Source of the DNA: Podarcis bocagei
Taxonomy: Eukaryota
Length of the DNA stretch: 64,000 nt
Reading direction: 5' to 3' (one strand)
Assembly: GCA_964188305.1 (NCBI GenBank)
Contig: OZ076888.1
Every line of letters starts with the position of its first letter. Within the stretch, counting starts at the first letter, position 1. Below, in pieces: positions 2,814 through 42,434 of this stretch. Made by a program: the position numbers and the translations under genes. The notes below the pieces were generated by a model, which searched no databases, had not been told where the DNA came from, and saw only the letters and a list, made by a program, of their open reading frames with translations.

Positions 2814-3514
2814 CCGTATTTTTCGCTCTATTAGACGCACCAGACGATTGGACGCACCTAGTTTTTAGAGGAGGAAAACAAGAAATAGGAAAGGAACGCA
2901 AAGCATCCTGAGCTAAGAGGGAGCGCTCCTCCATCTTCGCTCAGGAGGCTTTGTGGGGCTATCCCTGAAGCCAGGAGAGCAAGCACCAATCCCTCTTGCC
3001 CTCCTGGCTTCAGCAAAAGCAAGCCTACTGGCTATCCTCCCGCAAGAGCCGCACGCTCTGTCTCTTCCCCCACCTCCTGCAAAAGCCAGGGATAGCTGCG
3101 CGAAGCCTCCGCAGGGCAGCGGGATAAAGGCTCCCCGTTCCCCTGCGGAGACTTTATCCCGTGGCTAAGCCAGAAGGTAGAACAGCCAGCGGGATCCCGC
3201 TTGCTGTCCTGGCTTCTTTAGCTGTACGCAGCCTCTCTGGCTTAAGCAAAGACAGCCAGCAGGATGCATCCTGCTGGCTGTCCTGGCTTCTTCTTTGGCC
3301 GTGCGCCTTCATCCCCTGCCCAGGAGAGGCTGCGCGTGGCTAAGGATCCCCCAAGAGTCGCGCTCCCTTTAAAGAGCGCACAGAGTGCGCGTGCGGCTCT
3401 TTAAAGGGAGCGCTGAGCAGAGCCTCCCGCCTGCATTCGCTGCATAAGACACACACACATTTCCCCTTACTTTTTAGGAGGGGAAAAGTGTGTCTTATAG
3501 AGCAAAAAATATGG
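2814..3514. mobile_element. Tc2/pogo-type non-autonomous DNA transposon with GC-rich, hairpin-rich interior
   Basis: TA|CCGTATTTTTCGCTCTATTAGACGCAC ... GTGTGTCTTATAGAGCAAAAAATATGG|TA: ~27-bp TIRs differing mostly at CpGs, with TA TSD. Confidence 0.88.
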
Positions 3515-4368: not shown

Positions 4369-4523
4369 TCATATTTTTTCCGTGTATAGGACGCCCCCTA
4401 TTTTGGGAGACTCCAAATTAAGAAAACACTCTTTAGCACTACCTGTCTGTAAGATAAGCCCCAATTTTAAACCTAATTTTCTGGTAAAAAAAAACCCCTA
4501 GTCTTATACATGGAAAAATACGG
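4369..4523. mobile_element. Short Tc2/pogo-type MITE (empty form)
   Basis: TA|TCATATTTTTTCCGTGTATAGGACG ... GTCTTATACATGGAAAAATACGG|TA: imperfect TIRs of the CCGTATTT type with a TA duplication. Confidence 0.8.
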
Positions 4524-5953
4524 TAATTTGTATGCCATCTTTCCATAGTTAAAACCATGTTCAAGACGGCTTACACGTGAAAAGATTTACATAATTACAA
4601 ACATATCAAAAGTAGTCAAAAACAATGAATAAAGCATATCAAAAGTACACAGCCATTATTGAACAATTTCTGCATGAATAAGATGTAAATAAATAAAATA
4701 TAAACATAAACATACAAAAAATAATATAACAGCACAAAAAACCCCAACAATCCCTCCTAAACAATGCCCCAACCCAAGAGTCTATTCAGCAGCCCCAGCT
4801 TTTGTAGCTGGAGTAAGTCAGAGCTCTGCCCTCCCAAGCCAGGTGGAACAGGCTAGTTAGGCAGGGAGCAAGTCTTCCACGACTCACAGCCATAATTTGA
4901 TATTCTTCTGGTGAATATATGCTGCTTTTAGGAGTTAGTGTCAGATAAATAGAATGTGTGGGTAGTAGGATAATTTTGCTAAATGTACATTGGAGATCAA
5001 GAAAGCTTAACTTAGTGGTCAATTGGCTGTTCAGTTATTTTAGAACAAAATGATAAACTGCCAAACTTATTATTCAAGAGTCTGCTCCATGCTATGGTTG
5101 GGTTTTTTAAAAAAAAACCACAAAGGCCCCACCTACACATCAGTGCAGTTCTGTATCCTATCTAGTCTGAAAGCATTTGGTGGGGAGTGAAATATATTTT
5201 CTCCAGAGGTTCCAGCTGTATCAACCTGAATGTTCTATGACCCACATGGCAACAGTTCTGAAATGGTGGGCTGGAATAAATCAGTGAGTCATGGAAGACA
5301 TCCTCCTCTGCACTTCTTGCCAGGGTTCATTAAATTGGGTGGGGAAACTCTGGCCTCTCTCCCCATCCATATTTCTCACCAGCCCTGCTCTGTACCCTGA
5401 TCAAGTGCTTTTGCCTCGGAGGAATGTGTCCTTGCCATTTCTATTGGTTGTCAGAGTGGAGATGTGTAGAAATCTCTGAGTTGTACATAGTCGGGATATA
5501 GCCTGTTATAAGAAAGGTAAGAGTCACATCCATTGCTCTACTTGCTTTTGGATCTGGCTGTATGCATGACTGGCATGAACACCCTGGAAGGTTGCCCATG
5601 GGAGTCTGTGGCCCTTTGTTGAAAAGTATTCCCCATGCTTGCCTTAGATGAAATCACAAAGTGTTTTGTTCACATCTTCTTCACTATTTGCATGGAGAGA
5701 TTTATTCCCTTTTTTCACCCTTAGATTATAGTCATCTTAATCAGGGTAGGGAACCAGTGGCCCTTCAAATGTTGTTGGGCTTTTCTGTTGGCCCCAACCA
5801 GGGTGGCCAGTAGCCAGGAATGTTAGGAGCTAGAGTCCAGCAATATCCAGAGAACCGTAGCTTCCCCATCCTTTCTTTATGCCTTCCATCTATTGAAGAA
5901 TGGCTCGTATCTTATAGAGAGGTTGACATTAATAAAACTTTTACCGGCTTAGG

Positions 5954-8779: not shown

Positions 8780-9442
8780 ACTACAGCTTTCTGTGAACTA
8801 CCACCCTCTTGCTGCTGTCACTTCAAGCACACTGTCACCATTTAACAAGGCATTTTGTCCATGTGACGTTCACTTGTGAATGTACATGCTAATAATAATG
8901 CACTGGTACACAAGGCACTGCTTTTATCATAATTTAGTCCAATATACAGCCCTGTATCGATAGAATCCTAAGTAACTGTCAGCTGATTTGATTGATTTAT
9001 GAAAGATTGTGTATTGCAGTTAGTGAGGAAGAGTACAATTGAGTGTGGTTATCGAAAGTGGAGTTTTGGTATGGAATTGCTTTCACTTGAGCTCCCTTAT
9101 AACACACTCAGTAGTGTAGGAGCTAATTCCCTGTGGTGTGAACTCATGAGACTGCACTATGCTCATCAGTATTGAAACTGAAACACAGGTCAAATCTAAG
9201 TCGTCTTCTTTTTTTACCCAGGGCCAAAATAGTCAGCAAGGGCCTTAATCATAGGTTACTGTGGTCATGTTATGTTCACCCCCTTATGCCTTACTTTTTT
9301 ATTATCTGTGAATTTAGAGTAATGTGCGTACATGCTGTGAGACTTGAGTAGTTTAGTGCTTATAATATAGCAGTGTGTCACATGGAGAAGATACTGTGGA
9401 TTTAGAAATCACATTTATGAGTGTTTATATTTACTCTTCCAG

Positions 9443-9581
9443 GGGCAGACTATTACATGGACGGCACTTTACATACAAAAGTATTACGGGAGATACAGCA
9501 ATCACTTTTGTGTCCACAGGAGTTGAAGGGGCCTTTGCTACAGAGGAGCATCCATATGCAGCCCATGGGCCTTGGTTACAA
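9443..9581 (+). CDS. SUFU: SUFU coding exon (equivalent to human exon 10), 139 bp
   Basis: ccag acceptor and gtaaga donor. Encodes GRLLHGRHFTYKSITGDTAITFVSTGVEGAFATEEHPYAAHGPWLQ (inside ORF 9375..9767). Confidence 0.97.
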
Positions 9582-11140
9582 GTAAGAGCCCTCTCATCCT
9601 CTTTCCATCTTGCTGCAGTCACTCCTTCCTTCTTCCCAAAAGAACATTTCTTCACTTCATTTTGCTATATTATTTTTAGGCCAAGGAAGCCTTTGCATTC
9701 TGCTGCAGTTTCTTTTGAAGTGTTTAGGAAAGAGAATTTAAAGCCAAAAAGTAATGGCAGTCTCTAATACTCTCTTCTGTGTAAACAGCAATTTTCTCTC
9801 CCAGAATCCCAGAGCATTTTACCAACTCTGCATCCTCTAATTCCCTCTCTTACCACTGCAATGCAGCTACCTCTTGTAGTTACTGTTTTTGAACAGCACA
9901 ATGCAGCCTAGAAGACAAGGTTACAATACTTGAACCCTTGAAAAACTCAAAAGGAAAATCAAAACTGCAGAAATGGGAACCTTGCAAAATGATCTTCGCC
10001 TAGGGCGCTGTTGTGAAGAGGCCTGGTTTTTGAGCAGAGAGGCATAGTATTCCTCTTCCCTTAATATGAAACTGTAACACACTTTTGATTTAAGAGTTTT
10101 TTTCTTAAGATATCCACAACATGAATTCCTAGAAATGACCGCACTCCTCCTGGCCCCTTTGTACACTGGGTATGTTTCACCCTTCCTAAAATCTTGCCAT
10201 CATAACTGCGTACATCCTCTAGGATGAGCTAGTGGGGGCAGGAAATAGAGGAACTATTTGAAACAACTGAGTGAAATCCATGCCTATGAAGGATGGAACT
10301 CTGCATGGCTTCTGTATCTCGTCTTGAAATACTTTCAAAGCTGTAGCTTTGTGTATATAATCTACAACTAGTTAAGAAAAGGACAGGAAGTTTAGATGTG
10401 TGGCCATTTCTCCCCCCTCACATTTTTCAAGATGCATTTCTTTCCTAAGAACCCTTCAGTTCTTTGCTCCTGTAGGTGTCACAATTGGGCTGGGTATGAA
10501 CTTTTTTTTTTAAAAAAAAATATTCTTAAGGCATATGAGCTTGAAACACTTTTAGAACATGTTGAACATGTAGGAAGTCCCTGTCAGCTTGTTTTCTGAG
10601 AAATGGATTCGCTTTCCCAGCACACTAATGATTTAGGATAGACACTCAAAGGATCTAGTCCATTGTTCTGTTTCTTGTACTATTGCCTGTGGCCTCTGAA
10701 TATTTGCTCCAGATAATGGCTTTTTAGGATTTGTCCATGTGGGAATGTATTGAAGAGCCCTGTATAGCTTCTCAGTTAGTGCTCCGGCTATTAAGAAAGC
10801 ACAGACAGTACAGACCCTTTTCAGAATAGACAAAGAATGATCTACATTTGCTGGTTGTGGGTGTGACATTTTTGGAAATAACCTTACCCAGTTTCATGCA
10901 CCTCTGGCCGTCCTTCTTGCTGCTACCTGCCCTATAATTAGACATAACTGACAGATATAGGAAAGCTAGAATGAGTAGTTAGGGCCTAGAGCAAGCAGGT
11001 TAGTAGGTGAACCTGTAGTTGTAGAATATTCTTAGTTTTCGAAATGAAATAGCAGCTTAGCACAACCCATGTTTGGGGGGATAAAGGAGCACATTTGTCC
11101 TCAGCAGAGGTTTTGTATAATCAGATAAAGAATTCCCCAA

Positions 11141-11664: not shown

Positions 11665-14600
11665 GTGACTACTCGTACCCAGCCCTTTTACTGTGTTTCA
11701 TTTTTGTCTAGCAAGGAAGTGGGAGATGTATGAAAGTGTAAAAAATGTGACCTCTAAATGAGTGCTTTTGACTCCTCATTAGAAGCATAAAGGTATTTGG
11801 CTCTAAATGGAAAGAATGTTTTGGATAACGATAACAAAAGAGAATGTAGTAAGATTCAGACTATAAGCCTTTGCCCGTTTACTTGGGAATAAGCTCCACA
11901 GAACATAATGGGATTTACTCCTGAGTAGACATGTAGAGGATTATATTATGTTTCCTAATGTAAAAACCACCAGGAAATTGTGATAGCAAGAATGGATGTA
12001 AAGGTGAGCATGTGGATATAAAGGTGAGCATGTGACTGAACTAAGGAAGATCCAGGTTGGACTTTTCTTGATTCTGAACATGATGAAATGTAAATGTTCA
12101 GCTATAAATTAAATACAATGTACATCCTTATAGAAAGATCTTTAAACCTTTTAGCAGTCAGCAATCCAGCTGTGCTCTCTGAATCTTGACAGAGGTCAAC
12201 CAGTGTTTTGTATGCCTTCTTTGGAAATATGGCACTCATGTTTCCAAAGCACCTTTCCTTCTATTACTACTACCTTACAGAAAATCAGCTGCCAAAAACC
12301 CTACGGTCATACTTCTACAGGAACAAGGTGTGTTTACCAAGAATTGATTAGCTCCACTTTAAGTACTAATCTTGCCAAGGTGAAGGTGAATTAAATTGAG
12401 CAAGAAAAAGCAGCTCATCCCCTTGTCTGATCCAGCAGGGCTGCTCTTAGATACCCTGACCTTAGCCTGTTTAAGGCTTTAAAAGGAAAACAAAACATAA
12501 CCCAGTATTTTGCATTTAACTTGGAAGCAAACTACTCACTTCTCTGGTAAAAACAAACAAACAAAACCTTGGAAGCAAGCTGAAATCCAGTCTAGATGTT
12601 TTAACTCTGAAATAATAAAATCCCTGGCAGTCAGTATCTGTTAATAGGCACACACTCTGCCTCAGTGAACATTGTTGAAAGACAGCCACACGTCCAATGG
12701 ATTACAGCAGCGGTGAGATACCTCTGGAGGCAATTTCCCCCAATCCATGTCCACTTAGCCCACACTTGATGTCACATGTCAGGTGTGAGGCAGGTAAAAA
12801 GACGCAGCTGCATTGGGAGGGGGCTTTTATTTGGTGCCTTTTAAAATGGGTGTCAAATCCACTTCTGGGATTGGTTCTACACAGGATCTCATGAGTGCAG
12901 CCAGTCCCTGCTGGAAGTGGGGCTTGCAGCTGCCACTGGTGAGCTGACTTGCAGTGACTACAGACCCCATTTTGTTTGACTTCATGGTTTGATTTCAACA
13001 GTTGGCCCCACTTTGCTTACATGTGAGGTGATTGAACACCAAAATAAGGCTTCTGTCATGTTTGGTTTTAGCTTCCACACCAAAAGTTCAGACCCCCCCC
13101 CCCAAGCTGCCATTGCTAGTACCTGATGCATATACTATTCATTTTTCATACAGAGAGCATCCATTAGTCACAAAGTGAGCCTTCTGCCCTCAGTACAGCT
13201 CATAGTTCTTCCTCAATGTCTTTTTTAATACTCTCTTGCAGTTGCATACCTTTTTCTCCACCTTTTTAAGCTCAGAACTTGCTGAGCTCCCTAACATCAA
13301 TTTGGAACACACAATTCCAGATTGTTTAGGAATCTATATGCTACCCCAAATAGTATTATGGGGAGGAGTGCAACTTAATATTATTTAGATTTTATAATAA
13401 TCTCATAGCAAATTAAGGTTTTTTGGCCACAAAATTTGAGGCTTTTTAGCATTACATATTAAAGTCCATGAAGAAAACTTTTCTACAAGTTTTTTATACC
13501 TGCTAATCAGTTACACCAAGCTGAAACTTAAGGATTCCTTGTGTCAGCCTAGCTTAATTCCCTAACACCTTCCACTGTCTCCGGTATTGTTCAATGAGAA
13601 AATCACTTTGAGCCACAAAGATGCTAAGCAAGCAAGAAGTCTCATTTGTTAGCACTAAGCTTCTGTTTGTATGTTAGTTACTGTGGCAGTGTCTCTGATG
13701 TGTAACACTCATACTAATGCTGTACATGATCAAAGGCTTCCAGCAACAGTTTCACCTCCTCTGGAATAATGGCTGCCAAAAGCATCAGCACCTCTTTCTG
13801 AAGATATTGCTAAGGCAAACCTCTTCCTGGGGGCAGAGTGAATGCTTCAGGTGAGCATTAAAACAGCCATGCTGGGTCAAACAAATAGCCTATCCAGTGT
13901 TGTGTAATGGGCTTTCTGTCATAGAAACCACATACAAAATTTTTAATAGCATTGGAGCTATTAAAACAGCATTTTCCATTTCTTCCTGTTTTCTTCCAGC
14001 ATCTGTCAGTCCATGGTGTTAGGAATAGTCAAAGCATTAAAAAGCTAAGACAGAACTTGCATTAAGACAGTACCTTTTCCGAAATAATAAAATGGCTGCT
14101 TCATTCTTTATGTAGCAGCACACATGCATTTGCCAGTGCCTTTGCTTTATTAAAGGACCACCCCTCTCTTGGCTCCATTGTGTCTTTATCTGCTTAACAG
14201 GCATTTGCAAATGCATAGTTGTTGCTTGCCCACTCTGAATTTATATTTTTACATCTAACAATATAATGTGAAAGGTAAGAAAAATGGCGAACATCATTAT
14301 TTTGAAACTGGCACAAATGTTCATTTTGCTGTAAATACACATGTTGGAGAAACTGGTGTGCTGAGCCTGACCTCACCTTCATCTAGGCGAAAACTCATTT
14401 GAAAAGCAGTCCTGTAATTTACAGTCCCTTTAACATGTTTAGCCATCTTTTGTAACATGATTTTGCTGTTGGATGTTACTATGCTGCTGGTGAGAAAAGT
14501 TCTACAGCTCAGGGCCAGACTAGATACAACAGTAGGCAGCTGGTTTTTTAAACAGTATTTTAATAGTCACAGCCATGCTTCCCCCCACTGAAACTACAGG

Positions 14601-39195: not shown

Positions 39196-39777
39196 ATCTA
39201 GGCAAACCCAAGATTGCTTTCCAGGGTCTTGGGCACTTGCTACCTGATTCTTATAACTGGAGATGCCCTGGCTTGAACCTTAGCCCTTCTTCAGGCCAAA
39301 CACCTGCTCTCTACTCACTGACCTATGGTTCCTCCCCAGTCTTTCTCTGATCACAAAGCTGACTTCATTGCTACTTTTTCTCCTAACTTAGCCTTCTTTC
39401 CTCCCTCCCTCCCTCGTTTTGCTTTCCCTTGGATTTTATACTGAGAATTTCTCTTAGCCCCTTTTTATCTTCAATGAGCTTAGCAGGCATTCCCTAATTA
39501 ACATAGAGGTTAAACCTAAACTCGAGTTAATTTGGGTTATTGGAAAGCAGCTTGGAATTTTGAAGGTGCAGGCGTGTGAAAAAGAAGGGAGAAAGATGGG
39601 CAAGAAACTGGGGCCTTCCTCTGCAGCTGTTTGCACTGCAGACAACTCCCTGCAGGGTACCTGTCAGATGTCAGGCAAGAGATCATAAAGGCAGGTGGGG
39701 GATGAGACAGGCTGGCAGGTCAGTAGCAGACAGGCTGTGAGCAGGTTGACCGTAAGCCAGAAACCTGGAGGTATGGA

Positions 39778-39955
39778 ACATGAGCTGCCTTGCACTGAGT
39801 CAGACCTGTCTAGCTCTGTGTTGCCTACACAGACTGGCAGCAGCCTGCAGGATTTCCGGCACTGGTCTCTCCCAGCCTTACCTGGAGATGCTGGGGGTGG
39901 AACCTGGAACCTTTCGCATTTAAACCAGGTTCTTTGTCACTTAGCTATGGCCCTT
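39778..39955 (-). mobile_element. Squamate tRNA-derived SINE (Squam-type)
   Basis: Reverse-complement similarity to 42435-42645. Confidence 0.6.
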
Positions 39956-40416
39956 AGCCACCTCACTCAAGCCCCTCCCCTGCCCCCATTATGCAGTGCC
40001 CAGACTGATGGAAGACAGGGGGTCTGTGGGCCTTAATAGCACCTGATCAGGTCTCCACAAGCACCTGGCTTTCTATGTCAAGAGGATGGATCACAGGCTT
40101 CTTAAGGAACGGCCTATAGAATTCTGCCCTCCCCCAGCTAGCAGGCTTGTTGATGTGTGGATTTGGTGTGCTCCTGGTTTATTCTGTTGTATTTAGCAAG
40201 ATTTATATACCACTTACTTGAAAAATAAATCAACAGTCTGCATAAGCAATGGATCCACATGGCTTTGTATTCAATTCAGGCCCTGTGACCATCCCTGGAC
40301 ACTTTTTATACGCACAGTAATGATAAGGCGAACAGCAAGAAATGGTTTGGTGGGATATTGTGTGAGCTCTATGGCTGTAGTATTGCATAACCCAAACCCC
40401 ATAAAATGGGTGAGTA

Positions 40417-41418
40417 CCGTACTTTTCCGTCTATATGTCTTCCCCGTGTATAAGACACCCCCCCCCCTATTTTGGGGGACTCAAGTTTTAAGAAAACGAG
40501 TTTCCCCGCCATCCCACCCTTACTGTGTTGGGAAACAAGACCACAAACACATTTCCTGGACTTCCAAGAGCATCTTCACAGTTTTCAAAGATGGGGGACC
40601 AGGAGGAGCAACCCATCATTCAATATCCACCAGTTCTACTTCAAAGAAAAGTTTTGCATTTGGTGGAATTTTGGCATCCAGCTGCCCTTTCTTCCCATAA
40701 GCCCATTCTGGTTCGATTTCCTGGTGAGCAGTCTCCCCTTTGCTCATGGTCAGCAGAGCTTCGTCCCAGCCTCGTATCACTTTCCCAACGCTGACTTTGA
40801 AGCTCAGTGGTTTTGCAGCTTTCTTTTTCTTTGAACTTGTTTGAATATTACTATCGAAGACTGTTCCATCTTGCAGCTTCCCTGCATACCAACATTGAAC
40901 GACATCACCCTTTTGGGGAAAGTTGATTTTATCCCCCTTCTTCAGTACTGACTTTGTATATTTTGGGGGGCCCTCATCCACAGCTTCCTCAGGCTTTGTC
41001 TCCTTGGGCTTCTCCTCATCAATTTTGACATTTTTCACTTGCTCTGCTACATGCTCCGGACTCTCAGTACCATGAAATCTCTTGGTTTCAAATAGCTTGT
41101 TATATGCCATGATCAGCTGCTCCTTACTGGCTGTCTTGGCCACATTTTTTATCTGTCCTAGTAGTTTGTGCTCTGACAGGAACTTGCGCTCCGCCTGCTC
41201 CTGCAGGAAGCAGACAATCTCCTTCCTGGGCAGGGTGTCTCCGTGGAGCTCCTCGGGGCTCCAGGGCTGCGTGGGGGCCGCCATGGCATCACCTCCTTGC
41301 AAGCGTCGCCACCTCACACAAGCGAGGGCTCCCTCACGAAGCCAGGACTCATGACCCCAGTTTTTTGACACAATTTTTTAGTCAAAAAAACCCTCGTCCA
41401 ATACATGGGAAAATACTG
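40417..41418. mobile_element. Tc2/pogo-type (Tc1/mariner superfamily) non-autonomous element carrying FKBP3 cDNA cargo
   Basis: Left end TA|CCGTACTTTTCCGTC...CCGTGTATAAGACACCCC..CTATTTTGGGGGACTC..TAAGAAAAC. Right end ATGACCCCAGTTTTTT..AAAAAAACCCTCGTCCAATACATGGGAAAATACTG|TG. Both arms align by eye to the empty element at 4369-4523. Confidence 0.8.
40616..41284 (-). CDS. FKBP3: Intronless FKBP3 (FKBP25 peptidyl-prolyl isomerase) retrocopy, intact 222-aa ORF; possibly a non-expressed processed pseudogene
   Basis: GCCATGG Kozak start. MAAPTQPWSPEEL...HKLLGQIKNVAKTA...GPPKYTKSVLKKGDK...GKVIRGWDEAL...IPPNAKLFFEVELVDIE is full-length FKBP3 (N-terminal helical domain plus FKBP domain). No introns, although vertebrate FKBP3 is multi-exon. 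Confidence 0.93.
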   Translation of the reverse strand: MAAPTQPWSPEELHGDTLPRKEIVCFLQEQAERKFLSEHKLLGQIKNVAKTASKEQLIMAYNKLFETKRFHGTESPEHVAEQVKNVKIDEEKPKETKPEEAVDEGPPKYTKSVLKKGDKINFPQKGDVVQCWYAGKLQDGTVFDSNIQTSSKKKKAAKPLSFKVSVGKVIRGWDEALLTMSKGETAHQEIEPEWAYGKKGQLDAKIPPNAKLFFEVELVDIE

Positions 41419-42434
41419 TGGGGAAACAGCTCGCTTAAATCCAGGGAGGTTCTTTGTGGCCTTCCATGAGGACAATGTACCAGTAATATCGATGAATGAA
41501 CTACAAAGCCTCAAATCAGCTCACTAGCCTGCATTCTGCCATGGAAAGAGCATCTGGTTTGAGCAAAGCTATTCTGGGCTTTGAAGCTCAGTGGGTGGCC
41601 TTGAGCAAGGTGTGTGTGCTCTCAGCCTAACCTACCTTTCAGGCTTGCTGGGAGGATAAATGAGGCAAGAGCTGCAGAGCATTGCACACTCTGAAAACTG
41701 CTAGAGAACTAAATCACATTAGTTGAATTTCCTTCTGGGTTTGAAGGTTGAACATGGCAATACTTTGCATGCTGTATGTCCTTGGGTGCCCCTCTGCTTT
41801 TTAAGAAGGTATTGGGTAGTGGAGCTGGAAAGGACTTAAAAGCCTTTAGAGGGGAGGCCAGACTTCAGACTTGTAGTACCTATTTTGTGTTTGACTTGAA
41901 CCTCAAGATCTGCCACCTGGGGCCAGGTGTAAAAGACATACACTTAAGATGAAAGAATAGGGTACTTTGAAGTAGCTGCTGAGCACAAGGATTTGTTTTG
42001 AGTACCAGCTGAACGTACAGTCCTCCTGCATCAAAATCCATTCCTGGTTAACCCAAGTGTTCTTAATTGGATTTGAAAGAAGGAGCCATTTAGTTGTTGC
42101 CATTGCCAAACAATTGGGAGTCAGAATTCTTGTTGATCTACTGCAGATCACAAGGAGAGTTACCAGTAGATCCTGATCTACCTTCTGCCCTGCCCTGGCC
42201 TATAGCCATGCCCACTTTAATGCCTTTCCCCTAACATATTGGGGAAACAACAAAAGATCATTCGGCAAGCTGTGCATTTTCTTCTTTGTAGCCATCAATG
42301 TGTCATAGTAGCTATAGCAAGATAACTGACATAGTCACCCACCCACCCATTATGGGCTCTAATAATCAATGGCTGGAAAATGATCTGTAGGGTTGGGTAT
42401 GAGTTGAAATGTTTCAATTAGTTGAATGGAGGAA

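What the first reader, a model, noticed from the sequence alone, without database searches (positions are those of the whole stretch)
40417..41418. A spliced FKBP3 mRNA copy packaged inside a DNA transposon (cDNA-carrying Tc2/pogo MITE)
Seen: an ~850-bp insert (about 40498-41350) comprising ~66 nt of putative 5' UTR, a complete intronless 222-codon FKBP3 ORF and ~118 nt of 3' sequence. It is joined directly to two ~70-80-bp arms matching the left and right halves of the empty MITE at 4369-4523. There is no poly(A) tail, no AATAAA and no LINE-type TSD around the insert, and the MITE centre is replaced rather than split. Known: LINE-made retrocopies normally end in poly(A) with TSDs, and Pack-MULE/Pack-TIR capture usually takes genomic (intron-containing) DNA. 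Inference: the element acquired an RNA-derived template, for example by template switching onto mRNA/cDNA during gap repair after excision, or by copying a pre-existing retrocopy. That would make a whole coding sequence mobilisable by a cut-and-paste transposase.
Basis: partly seen in the sequence, partly recalled or inferred. Interest (0 to 1): 0.9.

Follow-up and report, generated by a model that had tools for sequence, protein, structure and literature searches.

The report
Tailless FKBP3 retrocopy patched into a MITE
A fully spliced copy of the lizard FKBP3 mRNA really does sit between the two ends of a small DNA transposon, but it looks like a one-off repair patch in an old, immobile element that has since decayed as a silent pseudogene, not a gene that the transposon carries around.

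Summary
Window 40498-41350 (minus strand) is an 853-bp copy of FKBP3 mRNA: 66 nt of 5' UTR, an open 222-codon ORF and 118 nt of 3' UTR. It joins all seven parental exons exactly at six GT-AG introns. It is flanked by an 81-bp and a 69-bp arm of a TA-flanked TIR MITE, about 26 bp of the MITE centre is missing, and there is no poly(A), AATAAA or TSD.

The 'packaged, mobilisable gene' reading is not supported. The composite lies at one orthologous locus in at least four Podarcis species. No sister copy at 90% identity or more exists in the genome. Its TIRs are decayed. dN/dS is 0.56-0.81 against 0.03-0.08 for the parent. The ORF is broken in P. lilfordi and probably in a third species. About 470 RNA read observations at diagnostic sites all carry the parent's letters.

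The insert is 5'-complete and 3'-truncated, with a 6-of-8 microhomology at the junction where first-strand synthesis would start. The best reading is transposition-independent repair of a break in a resident MITE with reverse-transcribed mRNA. This is a known class of event (class 2 templated insertion, RT-product-mediated DSB repair). Transposase-triggered gap repair remains possible. Earlier first-reader notes on this genome report MITEs with swappable interiors; I did not test them.

The parts
40415..40416 (.). TA flanking the left terminus (half of the presumed TA target-site duplication)
   Evidence: Sequence. Same in P. lilfordi. Other family and related copies are flanked by TA.
40417..40497 (+). 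Left MITE arm. The TIR begins CCGTACTTTTCC and carries a 15-17-bp internal duplication of the TIR core. The arm ends ...TTAAGAAAAC.
   Evidence: Aligns to 4380-4427 of the empty copy at 75-78%. TIR scan. Word depth 158 against 27 in the flanks.
40498..40500 (.). About 3-4 nt at the 3' junction that match neither the parent nor the MITE. They lie beside a 6-of-8 microhomology between parent and MITE.
   Evidence: Three-way comparison. P about 0.026 for 6 of 8 against random parental positions.
40501..40615 (-). Truncated FKBP3 3' UTR (part of exon 7). It stops at least about 63 nt before the end reached by the parental transcript.
   Evidence: Aligns to L002:14988-15101. The independent L. agilis retrocopy and all lacertid parents continue further.
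40616..41284 (-). Open 222-codon FKBP3 ORF including the stop codon. Exon joins fall at 41183/41182, 41081/41080, 40973/40972, 40837/40836, 40769/40768 and 40671/40670.
41285..41350 (-). FKBP3 5' UTR (66 nt). It starts at the edge of the promoter-proximal ACTACATTTCCC-type motif of the parent, so it is full-length or nearly so. It carries about 17 nt that present-day lacertid parents lack.
   Evidence: alignment. Parental 5' flank.
41351..41418 (+). Right MITE arm. It ends ...GGGAAAATACTG, a decayed form of the family end ...GGAAAAATACGG.
   Evidence: Aligns to 4459-4524 of the empty copy at 76-80%. Word depth 638 against 29. The loose-end consensus of other copies ends ...GAAAAATACGG followed by TA.
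41419..41420 (.). TG where the second TA of the target duplication is expected. The same state is found in P. lilfordi.
4369..4523 (+). Reference 'empty' copy of the MITE family (155 bp). Its right TIR is perfect. The first 3 nt of its left TIR are lost.
   Evidence: It pairs only at its TIRs when folded.

Best explanation
A resident, already ageing TA-flanked MITE suffered a break or gap near its centre. The break was repaired with reverse-transcribed FKBP3 mRNA, without any transposition.

Proposed steps (inferred):
1. The 3' end of the broken left arm (...AAGAAAAC) annealed to a short U-rich match (UUUUAUU) inside the FKBP3 3' UTR.
2. It primed first-strand cDNA synthesis, which ran to the capped 5' end of the spliced mRNA.
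3. The far end of the cDNA was joined to the other broken end by end-joining, with about 26 bp of MITE centre lost.

This accounts for a patch that is spliced, 5'-complete, 3'-truncated, tailless and without a TSD.

Timing: the event happened once, around the time the Podarcis lineage separated from Lacerta and Zootoca. The patch has since drifted as a silent processed pseudogene. Its ORF happens to remain open in the window species.

Shown: spliced origin, junction anatomy, orthology across species, no second copy at 90% identity or more, relaxed constraint, no expression in one RNA data set.
Inferred: the priming step, the order of joining and the cause of the break.
For: - Exact joins of seven exons against an intron-containing parent in five squamates.
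- No TSD, poly(A) or AATAAA.
- The 3' end stops inside the UTR, whereas an independent L. agilis retrocopy and all parents run at least about 63 nt further.
- The 5' end abuts the promoter motif.
- 6-of-8 microhomology at the 3' junction, P about 0.026, with 3-4 untemplated nt. No significant microhomology at the 5' junction.
- The same element with the same junctions and termini lies in a 20-kb collinear, roughly 97% identical P. lilfordi locus. It is also present in two further species.
- Word depth inside the insert equals one retrocopy contig plus one parental contig.
- Each TIR differs from the family TIR at 4 of 23 positions in the inferred window/P. lilfordi ancestral state (the window's right TIR now has 5), whereas the insert's stem divergence is about 4%. 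This suggests the MITE is older than the patch.
- Stem dN/dS 0.56 and tips 0.81, against 0.03-0.08 in the parents.
- A CGA-to-TGA stop at codon 171 in P. lilfordi. A 5-bp deletion and a 119-bp deletion allele in organism I.
- At 11 diagnostic sites all of about 470 RNA read observations carry the parental letter.
- Precedent: class 2 templated insertions and RT-product-mediated DSB repair insert spliced cDNA without TSD or poly(A), with microdeletion and microhomology (PMC5110952, PMC4516963). Single-copy animal Pack-TIRs are mostly attributed to transposition-independent gap filling (PMC8277862).
Against: - No outgroup locus could be fetched, so a MITE-only pre-insertion state is not shown.
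- The 'missing centre' and the age of the arms rest on one empty copy plus a 29-nt loose-end consensus. Subfamily differences could inflate the apparent age of the arms.
- The microhomology is imperfect, was found after the fact and is only nominally significant at one junction.
- The read search used a 90% identity threshold. Sister copies that split off at the time of capture would now be about 89% identical and could be missed.
- The ORF has no indel after about 5-6% divergence, which is somewhat unexpected for pure drift. Simulated survival from stops alone is 0.22-0.34.
Confidence: 0.55

Rival explanations
1. The MITE was excised by its transposase. Gap repair from the sister copy stalled after about 70-80 nt from each end and switched template onto FKBP3 mRNA or cDNA. 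This made a cDNA-carrying Pack-MITE that could then be moved by cut-and-paste, and may have reached this locus as a unit.
For: - Two arms of similar length (81 and 69 bp) with the centre replaced is the classic outcome of abortive gap repair with filler.
- Microhomology at one junction.
- Both termini and a TA on one side are retained.
- Related TA-flanked elements with the same type of TIR carry unrelated interiors (window 2814-3514; L004:13855-14421).
- Unchecked first-reader notes report swappable interiors in this genome.
- A fungal hAT element did capture and amplify a spliced histone H3 sequence (PMC6710886).
Against: - No second copy at 90% identity or more. The element sits at one orthologous locus in four species.
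- The TIRs are decayed well beyond what the insert's age predicts.
- A 155-bp template is short for gap repair to stall twice.
- Nothing in the structure needs a transposase.
- The lacertid proteins listed in the search show no other FKBP3-like protein with the retrocopy's derived residues besides the P. lilfordi orthologue.
Confidence: 0.2
2. An ordinary LINE-mediated (target-primed) retrocopy that happened to land in a MITE. Its poly(A) tail and TSD were later erased by mutation, and a small target deletion occurred at insertion.
For: - L1-type retrocopies with 15-16-bp TSDs are reported elsewhere in this genome by unchecked first-reader notes.
- The breakpoint lies next to an A-run (GAAAAAG) in the parental UTR that could support internal priming.
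Against: - The insert is 5'-complete and 3'-truncated, the reverse of the usual LINE pattern.
- The sequence after the 3' junction is not A-rich, and there is no TTTT/A-type site.
- No TSD of 5 bp or more brackets the insert. The best shared 7-mer lies 14 bp away from one junction, within sequence that is clearly MITE.
- At only about 5-6% divergence a tail and TSD should still be recognisable. Two species that diverged by 2-3% show the same tailless junction.
Confidence: 0.1
3. DNA-level capture. A conventional FKBP3 retrocopy existed elsewhere, and a replication or repair template switch (Pack-TIR-type gap filling) copied part of it into the MITE. The donor has since been lost or has diverged.
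For: - Single-copy Pack-TIRs in animals are attributed to such gap filling guided by microhomology (PMC8277862).
- Truncation at the 3' end and the lack of a tail follow naturally if only part of a donor was copied.
- FKBP3 was retrocopied independently in L. agilis, so donors do arise.
Against: - No third FKBP3 sequence type appears in the genome at 90% identity or more. A donor would now be about 89% identical, so this is weak evidence.
- The copy starts at the transcript's 5' end, which is a coincidence under random template switching.
- This needs two rare events instead of one.
Confidence: 0.1

Closest known systems
Class 2 templated sequence insertions and RT-product-mediated DSB repair (Onozawa & Aplan, PMC5110952; Ono et al., PMC4516963); endonuclease-independent LINE-1 insertion as cited in those papers
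   Same: A spliced cDNA patch in a chromosomal break. No TSD, no poly(A) tail and no poly(A) signal. Truncation of the RNA copy, a small target deletion, a few untemplated nucleotides, and microhomology at one junction with plain end-joining at the other.
   Different: This is a natural, fixed, tens-of-millions-of-years-old germline example in a lizard. It carries an entire CDS with a complete 5' end, and the break lay inside a MITE. The reverse transcriptase involved is unknown.
Pack-TIRs and Pack-MULEs (Tan et al. 2021, PMC8277862)
   Same: Host sequence between the two ends of a TIR element. Single copy, microhomology at a breakpoint, and probably a long wait between TE insertion and capture, as in their transposition-independent model.
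   Different: The filler is spliced. That survey deliberately discarded intronless captures of multi-exon parents as retroduplicates, so this class was not counted. No chimeric transcript or expression was seen here.
hAT element carrying a spliced histone H3 sequence in Pseudocercospora fijiensis (PMC6710886)
   Same: Exon-exon junctions inside a cut-and-paste transposon, read there as capture of a transcript or retrocopy.
   Different: The fungal composite amplified to hundreds of copies, so it was demonstrably mobile. The lizard composite is a single copy with decayed TIRs.
Ordinary processed pseudogenes made by LINE-1
   Same: An intronless copy of a housekeeping mRNA, relaxed constraint, and CpG decay of the former CpG-island exon 1.
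   Different: It lacks the TSD, the tail and the TTTT/A-type site, and it is truncated at the 3' end rather than the 5' end.

Membership tests
RNA-derived (processed) copy of FKBP3 | Contiguous exon-exon joins where the parent has introns | tested here: met
   Seven blocks abut exactly at six GT-AG introns of the parental gene in P. lilfordi, P. muralis, L. agilis, Zootoca and Rhineura. In organism A itself a 762-nt parental contig matches only exon 1 (record 7).
LINE-1 target-primed retrocopy (class 1) | Target-site duplication of 5 bp or more bracketing the insert | tested here: not met
   No direct repeat at the junctions.
LINE-1 target-primed retrocopy (class 1) | Poly(A) tail after a complete 3' UTR with a poly(A) signal | tested here: not met
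   No A-run and no AATAAA. The UTR stops at least about 63 nt short of the parental transcript's extent.
Class 2 templated insertion / RT-mediated DSB repair | No TSD and no tail, with a deletion at the target | tested here: met
   About 26 bp of the MITE centre is missing relative to the one empty copy. The deletion size depends on that single reference.
Class 2 templated insertion / RT-mediated DSB repair | Microhomology and/or untemplated nucleotides at the junctions | tested here: inconclusive
   3' junction: 6 of 8, P about 0.026, plus 3-4 unmatched nt. 5' junction: 5 of 10, P about 0.43.
Class 2 templated insertion / RT-mediated DSB repair | A known pre-insertion allele showing a simple break site | not testable with these tools
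   No outgroup lacertid locus could be fetched. The nearest annotated gene lies more than 10 kb away.
Pack-TIR / mobile gene-carrying transposon | Host sequence between both termini of one TIR element with a target duplication | tested here: met
   Both arms are in the correct order and orientation. The flanks read TA on the left and TG on the right.
Pack-TIR / mobile gene-carrying transposon | Evidence of mobilisation: the same composite at other loci | tested here: not met
   Only the retrocopy and the parent are seen at 90% identity or more in organism A. The locus is the same in four species. Older copies below 90% identity are not excluded.
Tc2/pogo-type (Tc1/mariner superfamily) MITE | TA target-site duplication and short TIRs | tested here: met
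   TA flanks are seen at 40415-16, at the element 2814-3514, at L004:13855-14421 and in the loose-end consensus. The 23-nt TIR is perfect at 4501-4523.
Tc2/pogo-type (Tc1/mariner superfamily) MITE | TIR similarity to an autonomous Tc2/pogo element, or a linked transposase | not tested
   No repeat library is available. No autonomous copy lies in the window or the fetched loci. A literature search for the TIR strings found nothing relevant.
Functional retrogene | Purifying selection and an ORF conserved across species | tested here: not met
   dN/dS 0.56 on the stem and 0.81 on the tips, against 0.03-0.08 in the parents. A stop at codon 171 in P. lilfordi. A 5-bp deletion in organism I.
Functional retrogene | Transcription of the copy | tested here: not met
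   In one single-cell RNA run of the same species, all reads at 11 diagnostic sites carry the parent's letter. Only one data set of unknown tissue was examined.

The most novel reading that the evidence does not exclude
The Tc2-like MITEs of lacertids were still being cut by their transposase when this happened, and stalled gap repair routinely borrowed RNA templates. On that reading the FKBP3 composite is the visible survivor of a process that repeatedly loaded RNA-derived cargo into mobile shells. Other possible examples are the U1 snRNA piece in a MITE and the 'swappable interiors' noted elsewhere in this genome. Sister composites, now below 90% identity, would exist at other TA sites.
Probability: 0.15. 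Interest if true: 0.7.

Novelty: new member of a known kind. Interest (0 to 1): 0.35.

Why it matters
This is a clean natural germline example, fixed in a vertebrate lineage, of a full-length spliced mRNA copy inserted without any LINE hallmark. The anatomy (5'-complete, 3'-truncated, microhomology at the priming end) matches what DSB-repair experiments in mouse zygotes and human cells produce.

It also marks a blind spot. The one large survey of animal Pack-TIRs discarded intronless captures by design, so the frequency of RNA-derived fillers inside TIR elements is unknown.

It does not show gene mobilisation by a DNA transposon. The copy itself is a silent pseudogene, mis-annotated as a protein-coding FKBP3 gene in P. 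lilfordi.

Tried and rejected
- TSD search around the insert. Only a non-adjacent 7-mer was found, and the 14 bp between it and the junction are clearly MITE, so it was rejected.
- Hairpin-tip breakage of a palindromic MITE as the cause of the central break. The empty copy pairs only at its 18-bp TIR stem, z -0.63, so there is no support.
- The L. agilis 'FKBP3-like' gene as a sister composite at another locus. Rejected: it groups with the L. agilis parent, is 5'-truncated, has different ends, and merely has an unrelated MITE inserted in its 3' end.
- More copies of the MITE family in about 110 kb of other lacertid loci. None were found, so no family consensus could be built.
- Reaching the orthologous site in Lacerta or Zootoca. 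No annotated gene lies within 10 kb. The nearest recognisable gene is a SUFU exon about 31 kb away, and an exon fragment cannot retrieve full-length proteins.
- Literature search for the TIR strings. Only chance matches.
- The bacterial-type promoter and terminator scan is irrelevant here.
- The first look-up of sequencing runs attempt failed because the machine was busy. The repeat worked.

Full report
**What is in the sequence**

- Window 41284-40616 (minus strand) is an uninterrupted 222-codon ORF with the two domains of FKBP3: BTHB (1.9e-28) and FKBP_C (4.4e-28).
- Its best database match is Lacerta agilis FKBP3 at 92% identity. The exact protein is not in the public collection.
- On the + strand the ORF block is preceded by an 81-bp stretch (40417-40497) and followed by a 69-bp stretch (41350-41418).
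- These stretches align to the left and right parts of a 155-bp TIR element at 4369-4523, at 74-80% identity, in the right order and orientation.
- The 23-nt TIR CCGTATTTTTCCATGTATAAGAC (CCRTG in the search pattern) is perfect at 4501-4523, with none expected by chance.
- Two related elements with the same type of terminus and clean TA flanks carry unrelated interiors: window 2814-3514 and L004:13855-14421 in L. agilis.

**The insert is a spliced mRNA copy**

- I fetched the parental gene from P. lilfordi, P. muralis, L. agilis, Zootoca vivipara and Rhineura floridana.
- In all five it has seven exons spread over 9-10 kb.
- The window's insert aligns as seven abutting blocks, with 94-97% identity to the Podarcis parents. 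Exon 1 is 80%; 7 of the 20 stem substitutions in the CDS are CpG transitions, so CpG decay is a likely contributor.
- Every join falls on a GT-AG intron. The spliced parents translate to 222 residues.
- In window coordinates the exons are 41349-41183, 41182-41081, 41080-40973, 40972-40837, 40836-40769, 40768-40671 and 40670-40501.

**Ends of the insert**

- 5' end: the copy begins at AGTCC, about 48 nt upstream of the parental ATG. This is at the edge of the second of two inverted ACTACATTTCCCAGC motifs that lie between FKBP3 and the divergently oriented FANCM. From general knowledge these resemble ZNF143-type promoter motifs. I infer that the 5' end is complete or nearly so.
- 3' end: the copy stops in the middle of the UTR. 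All lacertid parents are conserved well beyond that point. An independent FKBP3 retrocopy in L. agilis runs about 63 nt further, to a point 15-20 nt past an ACTAAA hexamer.
- The patch is therefore 5'-complete and 3'-truncated, the opposite of the usual LINE product.
- There is no A-run, no AATAAA and no direct repeat bracketing the insert. The longest shared word near the two junctions is a 7-mer that lies 14 bp inside clearly MITE-derived sequence.
- Relative to the one empty copy, about 26 bp of MITE centre is missing.

**Junctions**

- 3' junction: the inner end of the left arm (sense strand GTTTTCTT) matches the parental UTR just beyond the breakpoint (CTTTTATT) at 6 of 8 positions. The probability is about 0.026 against random positions in the parental mRNA. 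Between them, 3-4 nt match neither source.
- 5' junction: no significant microhomology (5 of 10, P about 0.43).
- On the + strand the left arm runs straight into the antisense of the mRNA. This is the polarity expected if the arm's 3' end primed first-strand cDNA.

**Where and when**

- The window is collinear, at about 97% identity over 20 kb, with P. lilfordi chromosome record OX395130.1. That locus carries the same element with identical junctions, the same TIR duplication and the same flanks, TA on one side and TG on the other.
- Contigs from three public runs were laid on 39400-42400.
  - X1 has zero mismatches to the window, so it is possibly the assembly's own sample. Contigs at single-copy depth (27-29) cross both junctions and both outer ends.
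  - Organisms B and I carry the same composite at the same place.
  - Eight other species labels (organisms B-I) hold 44-69% of the stretch's sampled words. Most of the queried stretch is the element itself, so they probably carry it too.
- In a tree, the window and P. lilfordi copies form one clade (support 100) on a stem of 0.042, with tips of 0.011-0.013. The clade attaches near the base of the Podarcis parental lineage with weak support (55).
- The L. agilis retrocopy groups with its own parent, so it is a separate event.
- Retrocopy dS (0.047 + 0.014) is about half the Podarcis-Lacerta parental dS of 0.11. This places the event near that split.

**Copy number, constraint and expression**

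- Inside the insert, summed word depth is about twice the flank depth. It resolves into one retrocopy contig plus one other contig type, whose letters are those of the parent and of the RNA reads. At 90% identity or more, the genome therefore holds the parent and this one copy.
- Caveat: a sister copy that split off at the time of capture would now be about 89% identical and could be missed.
- dN/dS is 0.56 on the stem and 0.81 on each tip, against 0.03-0.08 among the parents.
- P. lilfordi has a CGA-to-TGA stop at codon 171. This is why its annotation lists a 170-residue 'FKBP3'.
- Organism I has a 5-bp deletion at 40954 at single-copy depth, probably in the retrocopy. It also has a contig skipping 41231-41349 at half depth, which is probably a heterozygous deletion.
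- In a single-cell RNA run of the window species, all of about 470 read observations at 11 diagnostic sites carry the parental letter.
- An ORF staying free of stops after this much drift is not remarkable (simulated probability 0.22-0.34). The absence of any coding indel is mildly unexpected.

**Age of the arms**

- In the inferred window/P. lilfordi ancestral state, each TIR differs from the family TIR at 4 of 23 positions; the window's right TIR now has 5. The left TIR also has a 15-17-bp internal duplication.
- Against a 29-nt consensus of the nearest other copies, the right terminus differs at 3-4 of 27 positions.
- The insert's stem divergence is about 4%, so the arms look older than the patch. 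This is suggestive only, because no proper family consensus could be built.

**Mechanism**

- The structure matches what is described for class 2 templated insertions and for RT-product-mediated repair of induced breaks in mouse zygotes. Those events insert spliced cDNA with no TSD and no tail, with truncation, microdeletion, a few untemplated nucleotides, and microhomology often at only one end (PMC5110952, PMC4516963).
- It also fits the transposition-independent gap-filling origin proposed for single-copy animal Pack-TIRs. That survey explicitly removed intronless captures from its counts (PMC8277862).
- I therefore favour a single in-situ repair event in a resident MITE (confidence 0.55).
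No feature requires it, however, and the 'mobilisable gene' corollary has no support.
- A canonical LINE insertion with later erosion (0.1) is disfavoured by the polarity of the truncation and by identical tailless junctions in species 2-3% apart.
- DNA-level copying from a lost retrocopy (0.1) needs two rare events and a coincidental start at the transcript's 5' end.
- A hairpin-tip break is not supported, because the MITE folds only at its TIRs.

**Comparison with what is known, and novelty**

- Spliced sequence inside a cut-and-paste element has a precedent in a fungal hAT element that amplified a spliced histone H3 sequence (PMC6710886).
- RNA-templated patches at breaks are established experimentally.
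- This case is a new, well-resolved natural member of that class in a reptile, inside a MITE. It is not a new kind of system.
- The Tc2/pogo label rests only on TA flanks and TIR structure. I could not test similarity to an autonomous element.
- Earlier first-reader notes on this genome report Tc2-like MITEs with interchangeable interiors and a U1 snRNA fragment inside a MITE. I did not test them, apart from seeing two related elements with different interiors. If they hold up, they would raise the rival reading.

Noticed in passing
window 2814-3514: A 700-bp TA-flanked element with related TIRs (CCGTATTTTTCGCTCTATTAGAC and its inverted partner). Its interior is GC-rich, internally palindromic and unrelated to the 155-bp MITE.
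   Followed up: partly
L004:12481-13854 (Lacerta agilis CM020424.1): An independent FKBP3 retrocopy inside an intron of a glycosyl-hydrolase-1 gene. It is 5'-truncated at about codon 13, tailless and interrupted by an insertion of about 570 bp. A TA-flanked MITE (13855-14421) is inserted at its very 3' end. It is annotated as protein-coding 'FKBP3-like' (XP_033016556.1, 274 aa), probably a mis-called pseudogene.
   Followed up: partly
L001:10001-10513 (P. lilfordi OX395130.1): The orthologue of the window's retrocopy is annotated as a 170-aa 'FKBP3' protein. It ends at a CGA-to-TGA stop, so it is a truncated retro-pseudogene rather than a gene.
   Followed up: yes
window 41231-41349 and 40954: In organism I (run X13) one contig skips 119 bp ending exactly at the right junction. 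Its depth of 16.5 compares with 15.7 for the contiguous form, so this is probably a heterozygous deletion that removes the start codon. Another contig has a 5-bp deletion at 40954.
   Followed up: no
window 9375-9767 (+): An ORF containing a SUFU exon (Pfam SUFU_C, 2.5e-25). The FKBP3 element therefore lies about 31 kb downstream, in or beyond the 3' part of SUFU.
   Followed up: no
window 39804-39904 and 41622-41722: Very high-copy repeats flank the element: word depth is about 10,800 and about 2,000, against 27 for single-copy sequence. They were not identified.
   Followed up: no
window 41302-41318 (minus strand), 5' UTR of the retrocopy: About 17 nt (GGTGGCGACGCTTGCA-like) are present in both Podarcis retrocopies but absent from all four lacertid parental 5' UTRs. 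This is either an old parental state or a small duplication in the copy.
   Followed up: no
L002:4880-4960 (parental promoter): Two inverted ACTACATTTCCCAGC motifs about 50 nt apart lie between FKBP3 and the divergent FANCM gene. They are conserved in four lacertids.
   Followed up: no
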